The position numbers were made by a program, and so were the translations under genes. Below are positions 5,051 through 13,505 of a stretch of 64,000 nt of DNA, piece after piece (positions within the stretch are counted from its first letter, which is position 1; each line of letters opens with the position of its first letter). The stretch is from Blepharisma stoltei ATCC 30299 (Eukaryota; Protista; Ciliophora): NCBI GenBank assembly GCA_965603825.1, contig CBFDEM010000035.1, positions 682,001-746,000 on the forward strand. The letters run 5' to 3'. Under the pieces are notes generated by a model that saw only the letters and a program-made list of their open reading frames with translations, was not told the DNA's origin and did not search any database.

Positions 5051-6124
5051 TTAGCTCGGCGAGGCATAGTTGCAAAGCTCCAACGCCTCAAGATGAATCC
5101 CTGCAGGATTGTTGTGAAGCCCAAGTTCCTTTAAAACTTCAACAGGCTCCATGACAGTTATTGGACTCTCAAACTTAATGTGGATTTTCGACCTCTGAAT
5201 GTTCGTCTTTATCGAAACCTACATTTCTCTTACTTCTTCACTAGATTCTGAGGACACAGTGATCAGCGTAAAAGGCAATCTTAGCCTGTCGCTGGCGCTC
5301 TGCAAATTCTTGTTCCTCTCAATTAAATTTTTAATTGCAACATAATGTTGTAAAAGCTGTTTGAGTTTTTTTCTTTTAGAAATAAACGTTTCTGAGTTTT
5401 CAGACTTAAAGCACAGTCTGTAAGAACTTTTATTGCGGGACTCCACCATTTTGCCTCTTTTTTGTAAAATTTCAGCAGCAATCAGGACGTTAAGTGCGTC
5501 GTAAACCCTTCTCCTGACGTTTTTTTCGTCCTTAAAGTCCTCGTCCCCTTGGTTGCTTTGCAACTCCCTCAGCAACTCATCAGCGACGTCTTTATAAGTT
5601 GCGCTCCCAAACCTCTCAACAATTTCCTTTACTCTCCAGCTCAATGCTTTAAGCCCATTACGAGATCTCAAAGTAGTGCTGGGCGGAGTGCACATCAGCT
5701 CGATTTTTTTGTTTGACGATGGAGTGGTCTCGCACCACATCGTCGTTAGGCTTGACTCTTCAAAAAATTCAGGCGATTGAGGATAAATATCAAGACCAAT
5801 TCCATTTGGACTGGAAATTAAATTAATATGGTTGTCATAATATGGCTTCATCTCCCTTAGTCCATTTTGTATTTCTCAATTAGAAGAAAGGGGAGGGAGG
5901 TCAGTCAGATATTCTTTATGGATAGTGGACAGGACTTCTTCATTCGACAAAAATTTTCTTGAATGCGGAGAATAGCTCAGATTCTTGTAAATTAAAGCTA
6001 ATAAGAAGTCGCCTTCTGTGAATTGTTTATATTTCTGTAAAATAGAAGCAGCTGACTCCGAACTGCGGAGCTCAGAAATCATTTCTTTTATGTATGAAGG
6101 GTATTCACTTCCGGTCTCTAACAT
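5051..6124 (-). CDS. E2F/DP-family transcription factor (DP-like); TGA=Trp at 5876-5878; intron 5219-5233
   Basis: DP winged-helix signature TYKDVADEL...DEKNVRRRVYDALNVL. ORFs 5876-6124 and 5219-5851 are in frame across a TGA. The 15-nt intron gtaagagaaatgtag removes a TAG and the frame continues to TAA at 5051-5053. Confidence 0.88.
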
Positions 6125-6493
6125 GGAATTAATCTCAAATTAATGATGATGGCGATTTAAGAACATGGATTGGGAATTGGAAAGATGTTTTATTTAACAT
6201 TTTATGCACAGTCAAATACTTATAACTAATATTTCAAATCGAAGAAAGTAAAGCTTATAGTAAGATAGCCAAAGAATTATTGTCTTGTGCGTGAATGCTT
6301 CATTTTCGCCAAAAATGGTTTGCTTAATGATAAAATTTTCAAAAAATATTAATTCTATTCTATTATTTTTTCTCTGCAGCCCATTTATTATGACTCTTTT
6401 CTTTAGAATCCCCACGATTAATAAAACCGAATCATTCTTAAGGTCATCCCAGAATCTTGGTTCTCAAGCAATCAAGAATTAAATTATTCATTT

Positions 6494-8923
6494 ATGAAAA
6501 TGGCTCGGATAACTGCTATAGGAAGAATTGACGATTCAAGGTTTCAAAAAGTTAAAAAAATATCTGAAGACCTTCATGAGTCTGCACAAATTGAAATAGA
6601 AATCCAAGGGCATTTCGAATCACAGCTAGATCCAGCAATAAAATCCTTGATGGAAACCCTTCAAATCCAATTCTTAAAAGATCAATCCCTTATAGTTACT
6701 CTAGACGACCACTATTTAGGCTCTTTAGAAGAGCTCGAGTCCTGGGCTTTCACAAATTTCCATTATTTTGACCACACTCCTTTCTCTTTTTACGAAAAAC
6801 AATCAAGAATCCAGAAAACGAAAACTATCATGAACTCAGAAAATATTTTTGTCGAGCTTGCTATCGCAATGGACCGTCAGCGGAAACCAGTCATAATAGA
6901 GCTTTTCCATAGGATTTGTCCAAAGTCATGCCAAGAATTTATAGAGCTCTGCTTAGAAAAAAAGAAAAATTCCAAAGGAGAAATCCTTTCATATAAAGGA
7001 ACTCCTTTCAACAGAGTTGTGCAAGGGTGTTATATTATGGGAGGCTATTTAAGCCAAGAATATGACGATAGCAATGAGCTGAATTCTGAGTGTTTCCAAA
7101 TTAAGCATGACAGAGAAGGACTAGTTGGAGTTACCAGAAAAGGAAAAGGGCTATTTTATATAACTTTGAGATCTCTGCCTCATTTAGATAGGAAATATAT
7201 TATTATTGGCAAAGTAGTGGAAGGGATGGAAACAGTCAGAGCTATTAATGAAGTTGAGCTTAATTACCAACACCCTATTTCTCCACCAATTTTAGCCCAA
7301 ACAACGCTGCTGCCTAAACCTTTTGATATTTTTCATGACGATCTAGATTTATTGCATTACTATGTTTCTAATATCTCACGGATATTGCCAGATTTTAATA
7401 TAATAAAGAAAAAAATTGCAAGCAAGCCTATAACAGAAGAAGCAGGTACTCTTATAAGCCAAAGGTCAGTTATAGATGATATGCAAAAACAGAAAGAAGG
7501 GTCCCGAAAAACAAAAATTGTCTGTACGCTTGGTCCAGCCTGTAGTGAAGTCCCTATAATTACAAAATTGATAGAAAATGGCATGAATGTGGCCAGGCTT
7601 AATTTGGCCCACGGGGACAAAAAATCGCACGAAGAGATTCTTCACAATCTGGATATCGCTTGTGAGCAGACCGGAGAAGAAGTTGCTGTTATGGTCGACA
7701 CAAAAGGTCCTGAAGTAAGGACAGGAATCAATAAAAAACACGCACCTATAGCCTTAGAAAGAGGGCAAGAACTAGAAATTACAACTGATCGCACAGTAAA
7801 AGGAACCAAAAATATAATTTCAATTACAAGTCCTGAGATTTTTAGCTATATTAAAATTGGCAGCACAGTCTTGATCTCTGACGGCGGTATTATATGTGAA
7901 ACTCTAGATATCCGGCCATCTCTCTTTAAAGTTAGAGTGATAAGTGCATCAGTACCTCTTTTAGAGCATCAAAATATTACTGTATTAGGCTCTCGTATAG
8001 GAATAACCAAACGTGTTGTAGAAAATGACGAGCTTTTATTAGAATTAGTATCAAGCCACAAAATAGATTTTGTAGCCATTAGCTTTACACAAAGAAAGCA
8101 AGATGTTATCGATATGAGACAACTTTTGGGAGAAAATGGAAAATTTATCAAAATTATTGGAAAAATAGAAAATATCGAAGGGTTAGAAAATACTGAAGAA
8201 ATTGTAAAAGAAAGTGATGGAGTTATGGTGGCAAGAGGAGACCTAGGGATGAACTTACCTAATGAAAAAGTGTTTTTAGCTCAGAAGTTTATAATTAGCA
8301 TTGCAAATCAATACGCAAAACCTGTGCTGACTGCTACTCAAATGCTAGAATCAATGATCAAGAACCCGCGCCCAACAAGAGCTGAAGCAAGTGATATCGC
8401 TAATGCAATTATTGATGGAACTGATGCCGTTATGCTTTCTTCAGAAACTTGTATTGGGCAGTTTCCTATAGAAGCTCTAACATTTATGTCAAAAATTTGT
8501 CTGGAGGCTGAAAAATACCAAGAAACTTTAAAAAAGCAGATCAAGGGCGACTTTGTAGCAGGGTCAAGAGAAGGCACATGCAAAGCTGCTGCAAATATTT
8601 CGAACCAAAGAGGAGCTAATGTTATAGTCGTATTTAGCGATAGAGGTGGGACTGCAAGACTTGTCGAGAAATATCGGCCTAAAGCCCCAATTTTTGTGCT
8701 TTCTACTAATGAAGCTACAATCCGCCAGTTAAAATTCTATAGAAATCTTTGGGGAATTAAGATAGAGAAATATGAGCAATTAGAAGTGATGATAAATAAT
8801 GCATTTGAAGAGCTTAAACGGAGACTGGTAGCAAGATCTGGAGATCATGCTGTCATTGTATATGGGCATTCAGAAAATAACCCTAATAAAGCGGATGCGT
8901 TGACTTTTAGAGGAATTCCTTAA
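6494..8923 (+). CDS. PPIL6-like cyclophilin / pyruvate kinase fusion protein (809 aa)
   Basis: aa ~1-270 resemble PPIL6: N-terminal domain plus IIELFHRICPKSCQEFIELC, YKGTPFNRVV, FYITLRSLPHLDRKYIIIGKVVEG. From RKTKIVCTLGPA (7505) there is a full pyruvate kinase: DTKGPEVRTG, KIEN, MVARGDLG, ATQMLESMIKNPRPTRAE. No intervening stop. Confidence 0.93.
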   Translation: MKMARITAIGRIDDSRFQKVKKISEDLHESAQIEIEIQGHFESQLDPAIKSLMETLQIQFLKDQSLIVTLDDHYLGSLEELESWAFTNFHYFDHTPFSFYEKQSRIQKTKTIMNSENIFVELAIAMDRQRKPVIIELFHRICPKSCQEFIELCLEKKKNSKGEILSYKGTPFNRVVQGCYIMGGYLSQEYDDSNELNSECFQIKHDREGLVGVTRKGKGLFYITLRSLPHLDRKYIIIGKVVEGMETVRAINEVELNYQHPISPPILAQTTLLPKPFDIFHDDLDLLHYYVSNISRILPDFNIIKKKIASKPITEEAGTLISQRSVIDDMQKQKEGSRKTKIVCTLGPACSEVPIITKLIENGMNVARLNLAHGDKKSHEEILHNLDIACEQTGEEVAVMVDTKGPEVRTGINKKHAPIALERGQELEITTDRTVKGTKNIISITSPEIFSYIKIGSTVLISDGGIICETLDIRPSLFKVRVISASVPLLEHQNITVLGSRIGITKRVVENDELLLELVSSHKIDFVAISFTQRKQDVIDMRQLLGENGKFIKIIGKIENIEGLENTEEIVKESDGVMVARGDLGMNLPNEKVFLAQKFIISIANQYAKPVLTATQMLESMIKNPRPTRAEASDIANAIIDGTDAVMLSSETCIGQFPIEALTFMSKICLEAEKYQETLKKQIKGDFVAGSREGTCKAAANISNQRGANVIVVFSDRGGTARLVEKYRPKAPIFVLSTNEATIRQLKFYRNLWGIKIEKYEQLEVMINNAFEELKRRLVARSGDHAVIVYGHSENNPNKADALTFRGIP

Positions 8924-9034
8924 TTAATTATGCTTGCCTTTATAAAGGGCATTTTAGCATTTTCAACTGACTGCATAAGAAATCTAAACACTTAATTTTT
9001 GTTATCTATATGGCGCTATTTTTTATATTATTTT

Positions 9035-9722
9035 ATGCAAAAAGAATCAAAATTTAGCAAAACACTAGCAGGATCTGTAATTAATTTCCTCCGAAGCGCT
9101 CAGCCTGCTCCTTTTGATGCTATTCTTGCCCATCTTGAAGGTGTTTATCAGTCACTGAGAAATATTTCTGGAGCTAAGTATAAAGGGAATGACATCCCAA
9201 GATCTTTGAGGGGTTTATCGCATTTAAAAGCATTTAAAATCAATGGAGATATGTGATCTCTTGACGTAAAAATCCAATCAGGAAGATAAAGCCAAGGAAT
9301 ACGAAACTATGAAATCATCACTCTTAGAAAAACGCAAAAAGAGAAGCAGGGCCAGCAATAAGCTGCCTTCAGTGCCTAGCACCACAAAAAACTCAAAATT
9401 TATTTACATGCTTGAGCATTACTCAGTCATTCTGAAAAGGGACCCAATTTTCAGCAAGCTCTTTAAAGACTCATTTAAGGTAAATTTAAAACAGAAAGTA
9501 AAAGGAAATGAACAAATAGAAGAATGCATCCAAAAGGTAGGATCATGAGAAAGACTACTAGGAATGGTCCAAGGATATGTAATTACTGCAAATTATTGTA
9601 TGCTTTATGTAGTTGAAGAGTTGAAAACCAAAATGGAAATGAATGAGCACAACCCAGAATTAGAAGAAACATACAGGTTTTTGCTAGGACATTTAAATAA
9701 AATTGAGCAGCTGGCTGAATAA
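9035..9722 (+). CDS. Hypothetical protein; introns 9266-9281 (16 nt) and 9480-9494 (15 nt); TGA=Trp at 9254 and 9546
   Basis: The 16-nt intron gtaaaaatccaatcag joins ORFs 8999-9256 and 9309-9548 in frame; the frame then runs to TAA 9720-9722. No recognised family. Confidence 0.7.
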
Positions 9723-9825
9723 ATAATTTTTTATCGTAAATTTCTATGAAACAGCTGTTGAAGAATTATCATTTTGAAGATGACCATAATTTCTATATAA
9801 ATGTTAATTATCTGAAATAAAATTC

Positions 9826-10725
9826 ATGGACAACGAAAAGTCTAATGATGCGATCTATGCATCTATGGTTGGCACCTGCATTTTAAGTGTGATCGGATCA
9901 ATTTTTGTAATTTCTGCCTACATTTTATTCAAAGAACTAAGAGCGTTTGCTTTTAAACTGGTCGCTTATTTAGCTTTTGCCGACATGTGCTCTGCTTTAG
10001 GTATTTTCTACTTAGTTTACATGATCCCTTGAAAAGTTTCAGACCCTCTCTGCCAATTTCAAGCCTCAGTCAGTCTTTATTTTGACCTTTCCGGTGTTTT
10101 ATGATCAAATATCATCGCTCATGCACTTTATTCAGCAGTTATCAGGCACAAGCCTATAGAGCTTTACCACACAAAATACCTCATTTATGCATTCACAATT
10201 CCAATAATCCCTGCAGTCATCCCTTTTATCTCTAACGATTATGGGAGTTCTGGAGCCTGATGCTGGATATCAGGAACATCAGTTTACCAAAATTTAGAAA
10301 AATATTTTTTATTTTATATTCCTATGTGATTTGTATTAATTTACAATGCTGTGGTGTACTTAAAAGTGATAAGAAAAATAAAAAATGAAGCAGATATAGG
10401 GAGTAGAGAAAACAAGCTGAAAAGGAAACTGGTGAGGAAACTGAAATTGTACCCAATTATTTTTCTTATATGTCAGGTTCCTGTTACAATCTATAGAGTA
10501 TGAGGAACAATTAAAGAGCTTGACTGGACTGATTATGATCCTGATGATAGTTTTTGGATACTTTGAATTGCAGCAGTCAGTATGTGCTCAAATGGAGCAC
10601 TAAATTCAATTGCATATGGACTGACAGGAGTCGTAAAAAAGAAACTGAGAGAAGTGATATGTAGAAGGAAAAAAAATCCGCTTGAAGACTCTATGATGTA
10701 TGATATAGTGAAGGAAGAAATTTAA
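9826..10725 (+). CDS. 7-TM GPCR, cAMP-receptor (cAR)/GCR1-like; intron 10001-10015
   Basis: Hydrophobic helices, LRAFAFKLVAYLAFAD, LCQFQA, YGSSGA[TGA]CWI, LKLYPIIF, NGALNSIAYG. Continuous frame with TGA=Trp to TAA 10723-10725. Confidence 0.88.
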
Positions 10726-10772
10726 AAAATAAATTATCCTTCAATTATATAGACTGTATTTAAAAATATAAA

Positions 10773-11663
10773 TTAATAGGGCTCCACAAGCTTTTCAGTT
10801 ATTTGTTCATCTTTTACAATATAAAAGATTAACGATGTATCATGAGACGGCTTTTTTTTACCAAAAATTTTCTTTCTTAATTCATTCCTAACACTCCCAG
10901 TAAATCCATACACTATTGAGTTTAAAAACCCATTGATACTCAGCCCGATCCCTGATATCAAAATCAATACAAAAGGGACACTTTTATCTGAAGAATTTTC
11001 AATAGCAATTTCCCAAATCCTATAAATAGCTGGAGGGATTTGGCATAAAAACAGCACAATAGGGTACATTTTTAATTTTAATGCAAGTTTTCTTTTCATT
11101 TTTACTTCATTTGATCCTAAATTGGTTTCTCTATTCAGTTTCTTTATCACGGAAACATAAACTGTGGAGTTATATATTAATATCAAAAATAAAGGAAAAT
11201 AATACTGCAGATATTTCATTCAAGGTGTATATGCTTGATTTGGCTTAATTCAGCATCAGCCGTTATCTGGACCATACCAGCCTGCGATTAAAGGTATAAT
11301 TACGCCTATTCAAGGCATGCCAAAAGCGAATAAGATATAATATAGATGATATTTTTCAATAGTTCTATGTTTAACAACTGCACTATATAGAGCATGAGCA
11401 ATAACTGAAGTCAAATAAATAGTGCAATCAGTGAAATAAGAAGTGAGGGCTGCTTGAAATATACAAAGATTGCTGTTTTCACCATCGGGAGGATGGAAAG
11501 GGACCATGAAACCTATATGATTTTTACCTAATGCTACAAAAATATCGGCAATAGCAAGATAGAGAACAAGCTTAAAAGCGAAAACTCGAAGCTTTTTAAA
11601 CATATAATAAACGAGGCATATAAAGCAGCCTCCAAGCAAGCTTAAAATGCTTGATCCAAGCAA
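10773..11663 (-). CDS. 7-TM GPCR, cAR/GCR1-like paralog, convergent; intron 11513-11527; start codon unresolved
   Basis: LRVFAFKLVLYLAIAD, LCIFQA, YGPDNG[TGA]C[TGA]I, LKMYPIVL, NGFLNSIVYG. Intron at the same position as in the paralog. No in-frame ATG upstream of TM1 (TAA-AGA-TTG). Confidence 0.78.
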
Positions 11664-11818
11664 TCTTTATAAAAATGATCTAAAGCCAGAAAATCCTAAG
11701 AAATGAATATTTATAATTAATATTAAATCTTTTAAGCCTTAACTGCAGATAATTGAAGATCTCCCCAAATAAATCCATTTAAGCTATTTCCAAACAATAT
11801 ACAAGCTGGTGGTATAAA

Positions 11819-12142
11819 ATGGCAGAAGAAAGCAATATAATAAAAGTCAGCGTCAAGAGAGGATACGCTTCCTTCGTCTATCAAAGCAAAGAAGTCCTCA
11901 AAACCCACGAAACCGTTGCGCTCCATGGTCTTGGCGAAGCTACTGCCAATGTTGTTAGAGCTGCAGAAATGTTATGCTCTAATGGCTATACAACTCTTGA
12001 AAATTTCCAAACTTTGAGCGTCCCTGAAACAGATCGTGAAGGAATAAGCAGAAATAGGAACAAGGCCATCATCACGCTGAGGCGTTCTTCAAACTTTGAC
12101 CAAATTTGCGAAGAATTTGAAAAAACAAGAAAACCAAAATAA
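11819..12142 (+). CDS. Alba-family DNA/RNA-binding protein
   Basis: 107 aa; VALHGLGEATANVVRAAEML and KAIITLRRS match the Alba pattern. Confidence 0.85.
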   Translation: MAEESNIIKVSVKRGYASFVYQSKEVLKTHETVALHGLGEATANVVRAAEMLCSNGYTTLENFQTLSVPETDREGISRNRNKAIITLRRSSNFDQICEEFEKTRKPK

Positions 12143-12290
12143 ATTACTTAAAAATTAGTGATGAATTTGTGGAAATAAATTAATTTTATAATTTTTAAAA
12201 ATAAGCATTTGAATATATAACTTTTTAAGAGAAGCCTTATTGGTAAAAATAAAGAAAAATGCACTCATCTTTGTTTCTAATATAAAAATT

Positions 12291-13505
12291 ATGTACTCTT
12301 CAAAGCTAAATAGCAATCAGCAAGAAGCGTTGCTTAATTTTCAAGCAATAACTGAAAGTTATGATGCAGATGTGGCAATGGAATTATTGAATAAACATAA
12401 TTTTGATGTAATATCGGCAAGTAATGAATTCATGTCAATGCCAAGAAACAATTATAATTTTCAAGATTCTATGGTATCTGATGATATTCAGGACCCTCTT
12501 ATTCAAGATTCAGCCTATTCAGAATCAAGCTGGGCTATTATAAGATACGCAAAGTGAGGACAACAAAAATTAGTCTCTGGCATAAGCTGAGTGTTTTATT
12601 TAGCTTATAATTATTTTTACCCTCCAGTGAGGACATCAGAGGATGCTTCTGCATTTATCTCAATTCTCAGCAATTATTCTCCAAGAGTTCCCTTTACCAA
12701 CCTCAAACTCCAAGAATCCCTATCTGAAGCCCAAAAATTACGCAAGCTGCTCCTCGTCTACATTAATTCTTTTACAGTCCCAAGCCAATGGGTAGCCTCT
12801 GTTCTCTGCAGTCAAGAACTTACTTCATTTCTTGAAAATAATTTTATTTCCTGAGGAGTCGACCAAACTTCTCCAGATGGTAGGGCAGCAATTTTACTGT
12901 TTCAACTGACACAATTTCCCTGCTTTGTTGTCCTAAATCCTCAAGAAATTAATAACCTTCATATAATCAAAATCATAAAAGTCCCAATTCAGCTGAATGC
13001 ACTTCTTAATGAGCTGGACCTATGCATTAATGGAGAAAATTCAATATTACTGAATGGGGACTCAGAGCTGCAATATGAAAGAAAAATAAGAAGGCAGCAA
13101 GATTTAGAGCTAGAAGAAGCGGAAAGAATTGTGAGAGAAAGATATCTACAAGAAGAAGCTAAAAGAAAGCAAAAATTGAAAGAAGAGGAAGAAGAAGAAA
13201 AAAAGGAAAGACTGAGAAAAGAAGAAGCTAAAAGACAAAAAATCGAAAAAATTGGGCCTGAGCCTGAAAATGGAGATAATATTGCACAGATTTCATTTAG
13301 GCTGCCGAATGGACAAAAATGTGAAAGAAGATTTTACGCAACACAGACAGTGGAAATTCTTTATGATTTTGTTGAAACATTAGACCTCTCGGACTTTGAA
13401 ATCGTCATAAATTTCCCACTCTTAGTCCTCAGCAATAAATCACAAACCCTAGAAAATGCTGGTCTTTTCCCCAAATCAGTCGTCCACATCCGAGAATTGA
13501 GCTAA
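12291..13505 (+). CDS. UBA-UAS-UBX domain protein (FAF1/FAF2-like p97 adaptor)
   Basis: Single frame across three TGAs (12555, 12588, 12852). N-terminal UBA-like FQAIT...AMELLNKHNFDV, UAS NFIS[W]GVD, coiled coil, and UBX ISFRLPNG..ERRF..NFP..LENAGLFP. Confidence 0.88.

What the first reader, a model, noticed from the sequence alone, without database searches (positions are those of the whole stretch)
6494..8923. PPIL6-like (radial-spoke type) cyclophilin fused to an intact pyruvate kinase: possible axoneme-tethered ATP generator
Seen: one uninterrupted 809-codon ORF. The N-terminal ~270 aa follow the PPIL6 layout (RFQKVK..HYLGSLEELESWA..N-domain plus cyclophilin), with a degenerate PPIase site (Arg kept, but GCYIMGG and HLDRKY replace GFMCQGG and WLDGKH). 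The kinase keeps KIEN, ARGDLG and ATQMLESM..PTRAE, with small deviations (RLNLAHG, MLSSETC). Established: PPIL6/RSP12 is a motile-cilium radial spoke component, and lower-glycolysis enzymes occur in flagella. Inference: the cyclophilin serves as an anchor placing PK next to dyneins to regenerate ATP locally in a heavily ciliated cell.
Basis: partly seen in the sequence, partly recalled or inferred. Interest (0 to 1): 0.82.

Follow-up and report, generated by a model that had tools for sequence, protein, structure and literature searches.

The report
Radial-spoke-type cyclophilin fused to pyruvate kinase
In the ciliate Blepharisma, one real gene joins a PPIL6-like protein (known in other organisms as a part of the radial spokes inside beating cilia) to a complete, apparently working pyruvate kinase. 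Distant relatives keep the same fusion but with a dead kinase, so fuel-making at the cilium is plausible here but is probably not the fusion's conserved role.

Summary
Window 6494-8923 (+) is one uninterrupted 809-codon ORF, probably starting at the second ATG at 6500. It encodes a PPIL6-type module (N-domain plus degenerate cyclophilin), a linker of about 65 aa, and a full pyruvate kinase (PK). The genome matches Blepharisma stoltei.

The fusion is not an artefact:
- A syntenic orthologue with 58% identity exists in another heterotrich.
- A far more distant heterotrich clade (about 27% identity, five independent environmental contigs) has the same layout.
- In that clade the linker is under strong purifying selection (dN/dS about 0.02).

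The N-module profile matches mammalian radial-spoke PPIL6 end to end (E 7e-55). This gene is the only PPIL6-type gene in the genome.

The window's PK keeps every A-domain catalytic motif. It is one of only two canonical PKs in the genome; six other paralogues have rewritten active sites. However, the 58% orthologue alters the K+-site motif, and the distant clade has lost nearly all catalytic residues while staying under purifying selection (dN/dS about 0.1).

There is a precedent in a supplementary table: Tetrahymena radial-spoke neck protein Rsp12A is listed as cyclophilin plus FBPase.

Ciliary location and PK activity remain inferred, and transcript reads could not be obtained. I rate this a new variant of a known kind, of moderate interest. 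The scan had not noted this fusion on other DNA.

The parts
6494..8923 (+). Whole single-exon gene, 809 codons plus TAA; probable true start at the ATG at 6500 (807 aa)
6494..6838 (+). PPIL6-type N-terminal domain (aa 1-115), which precedes the cyclophilin domain
   Evidence: The profile of the N-module aligns to PPIL6 residues 21-305 from profile position 3. It is the only locus in the genome matching this part.
6839..7297 (+). Cyclophilin-like domain (aa 116-268; Pfam 130-263). The active site is degenerate: Arg kept, VVQGCYIMGG, a shortened RKGKG-LFYI loop, and HLDRKY
   Evidence: The LDRK[YF] motif is shared with PPIL6 in the printed alignment.
7298..7498 (+). Linker (aa 269-335), low GC, 46% identical to the P0004 orthologue
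   Evidence: The equivalent linker in the distant clade has dN/dS of about 0.02.
7505..8476 (+). Pyruvate kinase A/B barrel (aa 338-661) with RLNLAHG, VDTKGPEVRTG, KIEN, ARGDLG, ATQMLESM, PTRAE and MLSSET
8576..8899 (+). Pyruvate kinase C-terminal alpha/beta domain (aa 695-802)

Best explanation
This is a genuine Blepharisma gene, conserved across heterotrich ciliates. An N-terminal PPIL6/RSP12-type module (PPIL6 N-domain plus a catalytically degenerate cyclophilin) is covalently joined through a linker of about 65 aa to a complete pyruvate kinase from a ciliate-specific PK subfamily.

Shown here: the fusion is real, the N-module is PPIL6-like, it is the only PPIL6-type gene in the genome, and the PK catalytic motifs are retained.

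Inferred: the PPIL6 module docks the protein at the neck/head junction of radial spokes RS1/RS2, as PPIL6/RSP12 does in mammals, Chlamydomonas and Tetrahymena. That would place a PK that is probably still active in this species beside the axonemal dyneins, where it could convert PEP + ADP to pyruvate + ATP.

Family-wide, catalysis is not the conserved feature. What is conserved is the presence of a folded PK-shaped module on the spoke protein.
For: Fusion is real:
- P0004 (804 aa, 58% identity) aligns end to end and lies in a colinear locus, with an E2F/DP gene upstream on the minus strand.
- The P0051/P0155/P0156/P0154/L038 clade (821 aa, about 27% identity) has the same three Pfam domains in five independent samples. 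Its contigs carry 15-nt introns, so it is heterotrich.
- Purifying selection acts on every region of that clade, including the linker.

PPIL6 identity:
- The two best PDB matches are PPIL6 chains (E 4e-26 for the single sequence, 7e-55 for the profile), covering PPIL6 residues 21-305. Plain cyclophilins score at most 132 bits and match the catalytic domain only.
- Atlas neighbours are the '35 kDa cyclophilin' and 'inactive PPIL6' clusters at a score of 0.95.
- No other locus in the genome matches the N-domain.

PK competence:
- It keeps 63 of 69 columns that are at least 90% conserved in 47 unfused PKs; the range among real PKs is 47-69.
- All A-domain catalytic motifs are kept.
- Its best solved relatives are apicomplexan PKs (E 5e-108).
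- Only this gene and the C11 paralogue keep canonical motifs among eight PK-like genes in the genome.

Precedents:
- PPIL6 contacts AK8 and CAMK4 on RS1/RS2 (PMC11779644).
- Tetrahymena Rsp12A is listed as PPI 544-697 plus FBPase 809-941. Rsp12A and Rsp12B fall in RSP2-knockdown cilia (PMC12399478 and its supplement).
- Enolase and PK occur in Tetrahymena cilia (PMC8175508).
Against: - There is no localisation, proteomic or transcript evidence for this protein.
- P0004 changes DTKGPE to ELKGPQ and ATQ to CSQ.
- The distant clade has lost KIEN, DTKGPE, the Thr of ATQM, and SGE of MLSGET. Selection in the family is therefore not for catalysis.
- The window's PK itself has Ser to Ala in the K+ site. 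It also has Lys to Gln and Pro to Leu in the B-domain 'KKNxNLPG' lid motif. The effect of these changes on activity is unknown.
- PK normally works as a tetramer, which may not fit a fixed spoke position (established knowledge plus inference).
Confidence: 0.4

Rival explanations
1. The protein is spoke-anchored, but the PK module is non-catalytic in function. It would serve as a structural block or a ligand sensor (PEP, ADP/ATP or sugar phosphate) on the radial spoke. In this reading the retained catalytic residues in B. stoltei are an earlier stage of the decay already complete in the distant clade.
For: Catalytic motifs erode progressively across the fusion family: the window keeps 63/69 conserved columns, P0004 57/69 and the P0155 clade 31/69. 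The dead PK is still under purifying selection, with dN/dS of 0.08-0.13. The P0155 branch is 6-8 substitutions per site long. This genome already holds six PK-like pseudoenzymes. The window's PK has changes in the K+ site and the B-domain lid.
Against: The window's protein keeps every A-domain catalytic residue despite long divergence from P0004 (58% identity). That retention is hard to explain without selection for catalysis in this lineage. The Ser to Ala change is shared with a standalone ciliate PK, P0005, so it looks typical of the subfamily rather than a defect.
Confidence: 0.25
2. The protein is not ciliary. It would be a cytosolic PK isoform whose PPIL6-like N-terminal module acts as a regulatory, oligomerisation or chaperone-like domain, unrelated to radial spokes.
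For: No localisation data exist. PK is cytosolic in the Paramecium and Tetrahymena subcellular proteomes (bioRxiv 10.1101/2025.04.24.650466). In Tetrahymena, ciliary PYK1 is tied to the central apparatus rather than the spokes. Chlamydomonas RSP12 is a short cyclophilin that matches the query only weakly (E 4e-10), so a spoke could use a different cyclophilin.
Against: Every characterised PPIL6/RSP12-type protein is a radial-spoke component: PDB 8j07 and 9fqr, PMC11779644 and PMC12399478. This gene is the only PPIL6-type gene in a heavily ciliated organism. Tetrahymena Rsp12A shows the same cyclophilin-then-enzyme layout on a proven spoke protein.
Confidence: 0.3
3. The fusion is an artefact: two adjacent genes (a cyclophilin and a PK) joined by an assembly or annotation error, or by a recent loss of a stop codon, and expressed separately.
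For: The linker is AT-rich (GC about 0.33). An in-frame Met lies just before the PK core (DDMQKQ). No read evidence could be obtained.
Against: The same uninterrupted frame occurs in a syntenic orthologue and in five independent contigs of a distant clade. The linker is 46% identical to P0004. In the distant clade the linker has dN/dS of about 0.02.
Confidence: 0.03

Closest known systems
Mammalian PPIL6 (RSPH12), radial-spoke head/neck protein (PDB 8j07_S, 9fqr_HZ)
   Same: Both have the two-domain layout of N-domain plus cyclophilin. The alignment is end to end (profile 3-277 against PPIL6 21-305, E 7e-55). Both have a degenerate PPIase site with the LDRK[YF] motif.
   Different: PPIL6 is about 310 aa and stops after the cyclophilin domain; here a complete PK of about 490 aa follows. 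Mammalian PPIL6 only touches kinases (AK8, CAMK4) non-covalently (PMC11779644).
Tetrahymena Rsp12A (TTHERM_01018330, 1110 aa: CC, PPI, FBPase) and Rsp12B (882 aa: PPI), radial-spoke neck
   Same: These are ciliate RSP12-type cyclophilins that are much larger than in algae or animals. In Rsp12A a carbohydrate-metabolism enzyme domain lies C-terminal to the PPIase domain (PMC12399478 supplement).
   Different: The appended domain is FBPase, not PK, and a long N-terminal extension and a coiled coil precede the PPIase. Blepharisma has no Cyp-FBPase gene. Sequence orthology was not tested here.
Flagellar/ciliary glycolytic enzymes (Tetrahymena PYK1/ENO1 with C1b/C1f) and radial-spoke adenylate kinases (AK7/8/9)
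   Same: Both involve local nucleotide metabolism on axonemal scaffolds (PMC8175508, PMC11779644, PMC12399478).
   Different: Those enzymes are separate polypeptides docked non-covalently. The PK there is linked to the central apparatus, not to a spoke protein.
Standalone ciliate PK P0005 (rumen metagenome contigs L028/L029)
   Same: It belongs to the same PK subfamily: one clade with the fused PKs (SH-aLRT 100), sharing RLNLAHG and the altered B-domain lid motif.
   Different: It has no PPIL6 module, and its upstream gene lies on the opposite strand and is unrelated.

Membership tests
PPIL6 / RSP12 (radial-spoke cyclophilin) | Cyclophilin-type domain | tested here: met
   Pfam PF00160 at aa 130-263, E 3e-25
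PPIL6 / RSP12 (radial-spoke cyclophilin) | PPIL6-specific N-terminal domain preceding the cyclophilin domain | tested here: met
   The N-module profile aligns to PPIL6 residues 21-305 (189 bits), against at most 135 bits for other cyclophilins, which match the Cyp domain only
PPIL6 / RSP12 (radial-spoke cyclophilin) | Groups with PPIL6 rather than other cyclophilin subfamilies in a phylogeny | not tested
   No PPIL6 or Tetrahymena Rsp12 sequences were available as tool objects. Only ranking evidence exists.
PPIL6 / RSP12 (radial-spoke cyclophilin) | Degenerate ('probably inactive') PPIase site | tested here: met
   Read directly from the sequence, using CypA residue roles from established knowledge. 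Arg is kept, but GCYIMGG replaces GFMCQGG, the ANAGPNTNGSQ loop is shortened to RKGKG-L, and HLDRKY replaces WLDGKH.
PPIL6 / RSP12 (radial-spoke cyclophilin) | Resides in radial spokes RS1/RS2 | not testable with these tools
   Needs proteomics, tagging or cryo-ET
Pyruvate kinase (EC 2.7.1.40) | PK barrel plus C-terminal domain | tested here: met
   PF00224 E 3e-107 and PF02887 E 2e-22. The best PDB match is Toxoplasma PK 3eoe, E 5e-108.
Pyruvate kinase (EC 2.7.1.40) | Catalytic Lys and Mg-binding Glu (KIEN), Mg-binding Asp (RGDLG), proton-donor Thr (ATQM), Arg/Asn of R-x-N, and S-x-E of MLSxET | tested here: met
   All are present in the window protein. They are absent from the P0155 clade.
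Pyruvate kinase (EC 2.7.1.40) | Intact monovalent-cation site and B-domain lid | tested here: inconclusive
   D-T of DTKGPE is kept, but Ser becomes Ala in RLNFSHG, and Lys becomes Gln and Pro becomes Leu in KKNxNLPG. Ser to Ala and Pro to Leu are shared with the standalone P0005.
Pyruvate kinase (EC 2.7.1.40) | Enzymatic activity | not testable with these tools
   Needs a recombinant assay
Ciliate 'large RSP12' (Tetrahymena Rsp12A type: PPIase plus C-terminal metabolic enzyme domain) | Cyclophilin followed by a carbohydrate-metabolism enzyme domain in one polypeptide | tested here: met
   The architecture here compared with the TtRsp12A domain table
Ciliate 'large RSP12' (Tetrahymena Rsp12A type: PPIase plus C-terminal metabolic enzyme domain) | Sequence orthology of the cyclophilin module to TtRsp12A/B | not tested

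The most novel reading that the evidence does not exclude
Ciliates have repeatedly welded carbohydrate-metabolism enzyme folds onto the radial-spoke neck protein RSP12/PPIL6: PK in heterotrichs and FBPase in Tetrahymena. These modules would act less as fuel generators than as metabolite sensors for PEP, fructose bisphosphate or ADP/ATP, coupling the cell's glycolytic/gluconeogenic state to spoke signalling and ciliary beat. The active-looking Blepharisma PK and the dead-but-constrained PK of the sister clade would then be two stages of that transition.
Probability: 0.15. Interest if true: 0.8.

Novelty: new variant of a known kind. Interest (0 to 1): 0.55.

Why it matters
How long cilia keep ATP available to dyneins far from mitochondria is a long-standing question. 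Spoke-bound adenylate kinases have only recently been visualised. A covalent PPIL6-PK fusion would be direct genetic evidence that a glycolytic ATP-producing step can be hard-wired to a defined axonemal site. It would also give a single tagged or knock-down target in giant, heavily ciliated cells such as Blepharisma and Stentor-like heterotrichs. The contrast between an intact PK and a constrained dead PK in sister lineages offers a natural experiment on enzyme-to-pseudoenzyme transitions within a structural complex.

Tried and rejected
- Word-index protein searches found only the protein itself, one standalone PPIL6-like protein (P0002) and bacterial cyclophilins. The fusion relatives came only from the exhaustive HMMER search.
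- The AlphaFold model of the N-module from a 5-sequence alignment was unusable (mean pLDDT 38). No fold search was run on it.
- Hidden in-frame 15-nt introns were looked for and rejected.
- A second PPIL6-type gene in the genome was looked for and none was found. The best candidate, on C32, is a 202-aa cyclophilin with a basic tail.
- A Tetrahymena-type Cyp-FBPase gene in Blepharisma was looked for and is absent: the three clear FBPase genes are standalone and the fourth match is weak.
- The metagenome scan with the N-module gave only one more member of the distant clade.
- The Atlas holds no cluster of 50 or more members combining PF00160 and PF00224.
- Literature searches for PPIL6 plus pyruvate kinase, and for pyruvate kinase plus cyclophilin plus radial spoke, returned no papers.
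- dN/dS between the window gene and P0004 was not attempted, because at 58% amino-acid identity the synonymous sites are saturated.
Full report
**Observation**

Window 6494-8923 (+) is a single open frame of 809 codons ending in TAA. Pfam finds three domains: a cyclophilin domain at aa 130-263 (E 3e-25), the pyruvate kinase (PK) barrel at aa 338-661 (E 3e-107), and the PK C-terminal domain at aa 695-802 (E 2e-22).

The genome (G000) has 41,464,486 bases in 64 contigs, and the window is 34.7% GC. Paralogue matches carry in-frame TGA. This fits the published Blepharisma stoltei ATCC 30299 MAC genome: 41 Mbp, 66% AT, 64 telomere-to-telomere sequences, UGA read as Trp, and 15/16-bp introns (PMC9942806).

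Heterotrich 15-nt introns preserve the reading frame, so I scanned for hidden ones. The only GTA..YAG candidates encode conserved residues or are 16 nt long and would break the frame, so the gene is a single exon. The database copy of the protein (P0001, 807 aa) and the orthologue P0004 both start at the second ATG, at 6500.

**Is the fusion real?**

The exhaustive HMMER search of 1.84 billion representatives returned two full-length relatives among the PK hits.

- P0004 (804 aa, 58% identity, aligned 3-806) lies on a contig colinear with window 5060-13420. The same E2F/DP gene sits upstream on the minus strand.
- The P0051 group is 821 aa, about 27% identical, aligned 3-790. It occurs in five independent samples: P0051, P0155, P0156, P0154 (a shortened gene call) and L038.
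- All of these carry Pro_isomerase + PK + PK_C.

The P0051-group contigs are about 50% GC. They carry 15-nt introns; for example GTAGCGGACATGTAG splits the WDT|AGQE motif of a Rab gene. They therefore also come from a heterotrich ciliate.

Within that clade, dN/dS was computed by region:

| Region | dN/dS |
|---|---|
| PPIL6 N-domain | 0.03-0.11 |
| Cyclophilin domain | 0.03-0.04 |
| Linker | about 0.02 |
| PK barrel | 0.08-0.11 (0.24 in one low-divergence pair) |
| PK C-terminal domain | 0.09-0.13 (0.05 in that same pair) |

These values were measured at dS of 0.35-1.2; only the linker's dS runs higher (0.7-3.7). The frame is therefore translated through the junction. Between the window and P0004 the linker is 46% identical, against 53-62% for the domains. 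An assembly or annotation chimera is effectively excluded.

Direct transcript evidence for this species could not be obtained.

**The N-terminal module**

With the single sequence (aa 1-337), the two best solved-structure matches are PPIL6 chains from axoneme structures: 8j07_S at E 4e-26 and 9fqr_HZ at E 2e-25. The alignment starts about 55 residues before the cyclophilin domain.

A profile of the N-modules (alignment A2) matches PPIL6 over residues 21-305 at 189 bits (E 7e-55). The next hit is a 318-aa cyclophilin (9e5c_3h) at 135 bits. Ordinary cyclophilins reach at most 132 bits, over the catalytic domain only. Chlamydomonas RSP12 (7jtk_W) ranks lower still, at 99 bits.

Atlas neighbours of aa 1-300 are the '35 kDa cyclophilin' and 'probable inactive PPIL6' clusters, at a score of 0.95.

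In the Blepharisma genome, 21 loci match the cyclophilin part of the profile, but only this gene matches the N-domain. The best alternative, on C32, is a 202-aa cyclophilin with a basic tail.

The PPIase site is degenerate: Arg is kept, but there is GCYIMGG, a shortened loop, and HLDRKY. The LDRK[YF] motif is shared with PPIL6 in the alignment.

An AlphaFold model from five sequences was unusable (pLDDT 38).

**The kinase half**

The best solved relatives are apicomplexan PKs: Toxoplasma 3eoe at E 5e-108, then Plasmodium and Cryptosporidium. This fits a vertically inherited alveolate enzyme.

In a tree of 53 PKs, the four fused PKs and a standalone 499-aa PK (P0005, from rumen-metagenome ciliate-like contigs) form one clade with SH-aLRT 100. 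The Blepharisma housekeeping-type PK on C11 (46% identity) lies outside it.

I counted how many of the 69 alignment columns that are at least 90% conserved in 47 unfused PKs are kept by each protein:

| Protein | Conserved columns kept (of 69) |
|---|---|
| C11 paralogue | 68 |
| P0005 (standalone) | 64 |
| Window protein | 63 |
| P0004 | 57 |
| P0155 group | 31-32 |
| Range among the 47 unfused PKs | 47-69 |

The window protein retains the R-x-N, DTKGPE, KIEN, RGDLG, ATQMLESM, PTRAE and MLSxET motifs. Its real deviations are three:

- Ser to Ala in RLNFSHG, a K+ ligand by established PK knowledge.
- Lys to Gln and Pro to Leu in the B-domain KKNxNLPG lid motif.
- Asp to Leu at aa 515.

Ser to Ala and Pro to Leu are shared with the standalone P0005, so they look typical of this subfamily.

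P0004 additionally has ELKGPQ for DTKGPE and CSQ for ATQ. The P0155 group has RVKMGTL, ELAGGR, RLC(T/S)N, RGDHF, AMPILESL and MLGKST. That means the catalytic Lys, the Mg-binding Glu, the proton-donor Thr and the cation site are all gone. This group also sits on a branch of 6-8 substitutions per site.

Six further PK-like paralogues in the Blepharisma genome also have rewritten active sites. This agrees with two unchecked notes of the scan. The fused gene is therefore one of only two canonical PKs in this genome.

**Context from the literature**

- In mammalian axonemes, PPIL6 lies in RS1/RS2. There it contacts the spoke-anchored adenylate kinase AK8 and helps form the pocket for CAMK4. [quoted passage not shown]
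- In Tetrahymena, of 15 PPIases only Rsp12A and Rsp12B fall in radial-spoke mutants. They are assigned to the spoke neck and depend on Rsp2 (PMC12399478 and its preprint).
- That paper's supplementary domain table lists Rsp12A as 1110 aa, with a coiled coil at 509-542, PPI at 544-697 and FBPase at 809-941. It lists Rsp12B as 882 aa, with PPI at 209-369. The main text does not discuss the FBPase domain.
- Tetrahymena cilia contain enolase ENO1 and PK PYK1, whose levels drop when the central-apparatus C1b projection is lost (PMC8175508).
- I found no paper combining PPIL6 with pyruvate kinase, or cyclophilin, pyruvate kinase and radial spoke.
- Blepharisma has no cyclophilin-FBPase gene.
- No Atlas cluster of 50 or more members combines cyclophilin and PK domains.

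**Interpretation**

Shown:
- The gene is a genuine, conserved heterotrich fusion of a PPIL6-type module and a PK.
- It is the sole PPIL6-type gene in the genome.
- The PK looks catalytically canonical in B. stoltei, is partly altered in the nearest orthologue, and is dead but constrained in a distant clade.

Inferred:
- The protein sits at the radial-spoke neck. I put this at about 0.65, because every characterised PPIL6/RSP12 protein does so and Tetrahymena shows the same cyclophilin-then-enzyme design on a proven spoke protein.
- The PK makes ATP there. I put this at about 0.6 given spoke location, so about 0.4 jointly.

The family-wide pattern argues that the conserved role of the PK module is structural or ligand-sensing rather than catalytic.

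**Verdict**

I rate it a new variant of a known kind, namely axoneme-scaffolded metabolic enzymes and large ciliate RSP12 proteins. Interest is moderate (0.55).

Noticed in passing
G000 loci L013-L018 (C53:1334053-1335381, C43:190151-191476, C25:122797-124344, C39:202684-204267, C54:773858-775378, C52:572956-574479): Six further PK-like paralogues, three pairs in all, have intact long frames (TGA read as Trp) but rewritten catalytic motifs, for example KIEN becoming GIQN/GIQT or KIEK and DTKGPE becoming GLRESD or EIPANN. Blepharisma carries a sizeable family of PK pseudoenzymes. Only the C11 gene and the fused gene look canonical.
   Followed up: partly
window 5219-6124 (-) and L012 3063-4256 (+): Both PK loci of this genome have an E2F/DP-family winged-helix gene as immediate neighbour (about 40% identity by tblastx), but in different relative orientation. 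This could be a trace of an old segmental duplication or a coincidence. The window copy is split into two ORFs, 5219-5851 and 5876-6124, probably by a tiny intron.
   Followed up: partly
L022/L023/L025/L026/L027/L038: An unidentified heterotrich ciliate with an unusually GC-rich genome (about 50%), gene-dense and with 15-nt introns, recurs in several environmental metagenomes. Its species identity was not determined.
   Followed up: no
L028/L029 2410-3291 (+) and 6001-7500 (+): On the rumen-metagenome ciliate contig, the standalone PK of the same subfamily (P0005) lies about 2.7 kb from a gene with a Radial_spoke (PF04712) domain. This is probably chance in a gene-dense genome.
   Followed up: no
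PMC12399478 supplementary domain table (Tetrahymena Rsp12A, TTHERM_01018330): The FBPase domain (aa 809-941, E 3.8e-18) of this proven radial-spoke neck protein is listed in the table but not discussed in the paper. Whether it is catalytically intact is an open question parallel to the one here.
   Followed up: no
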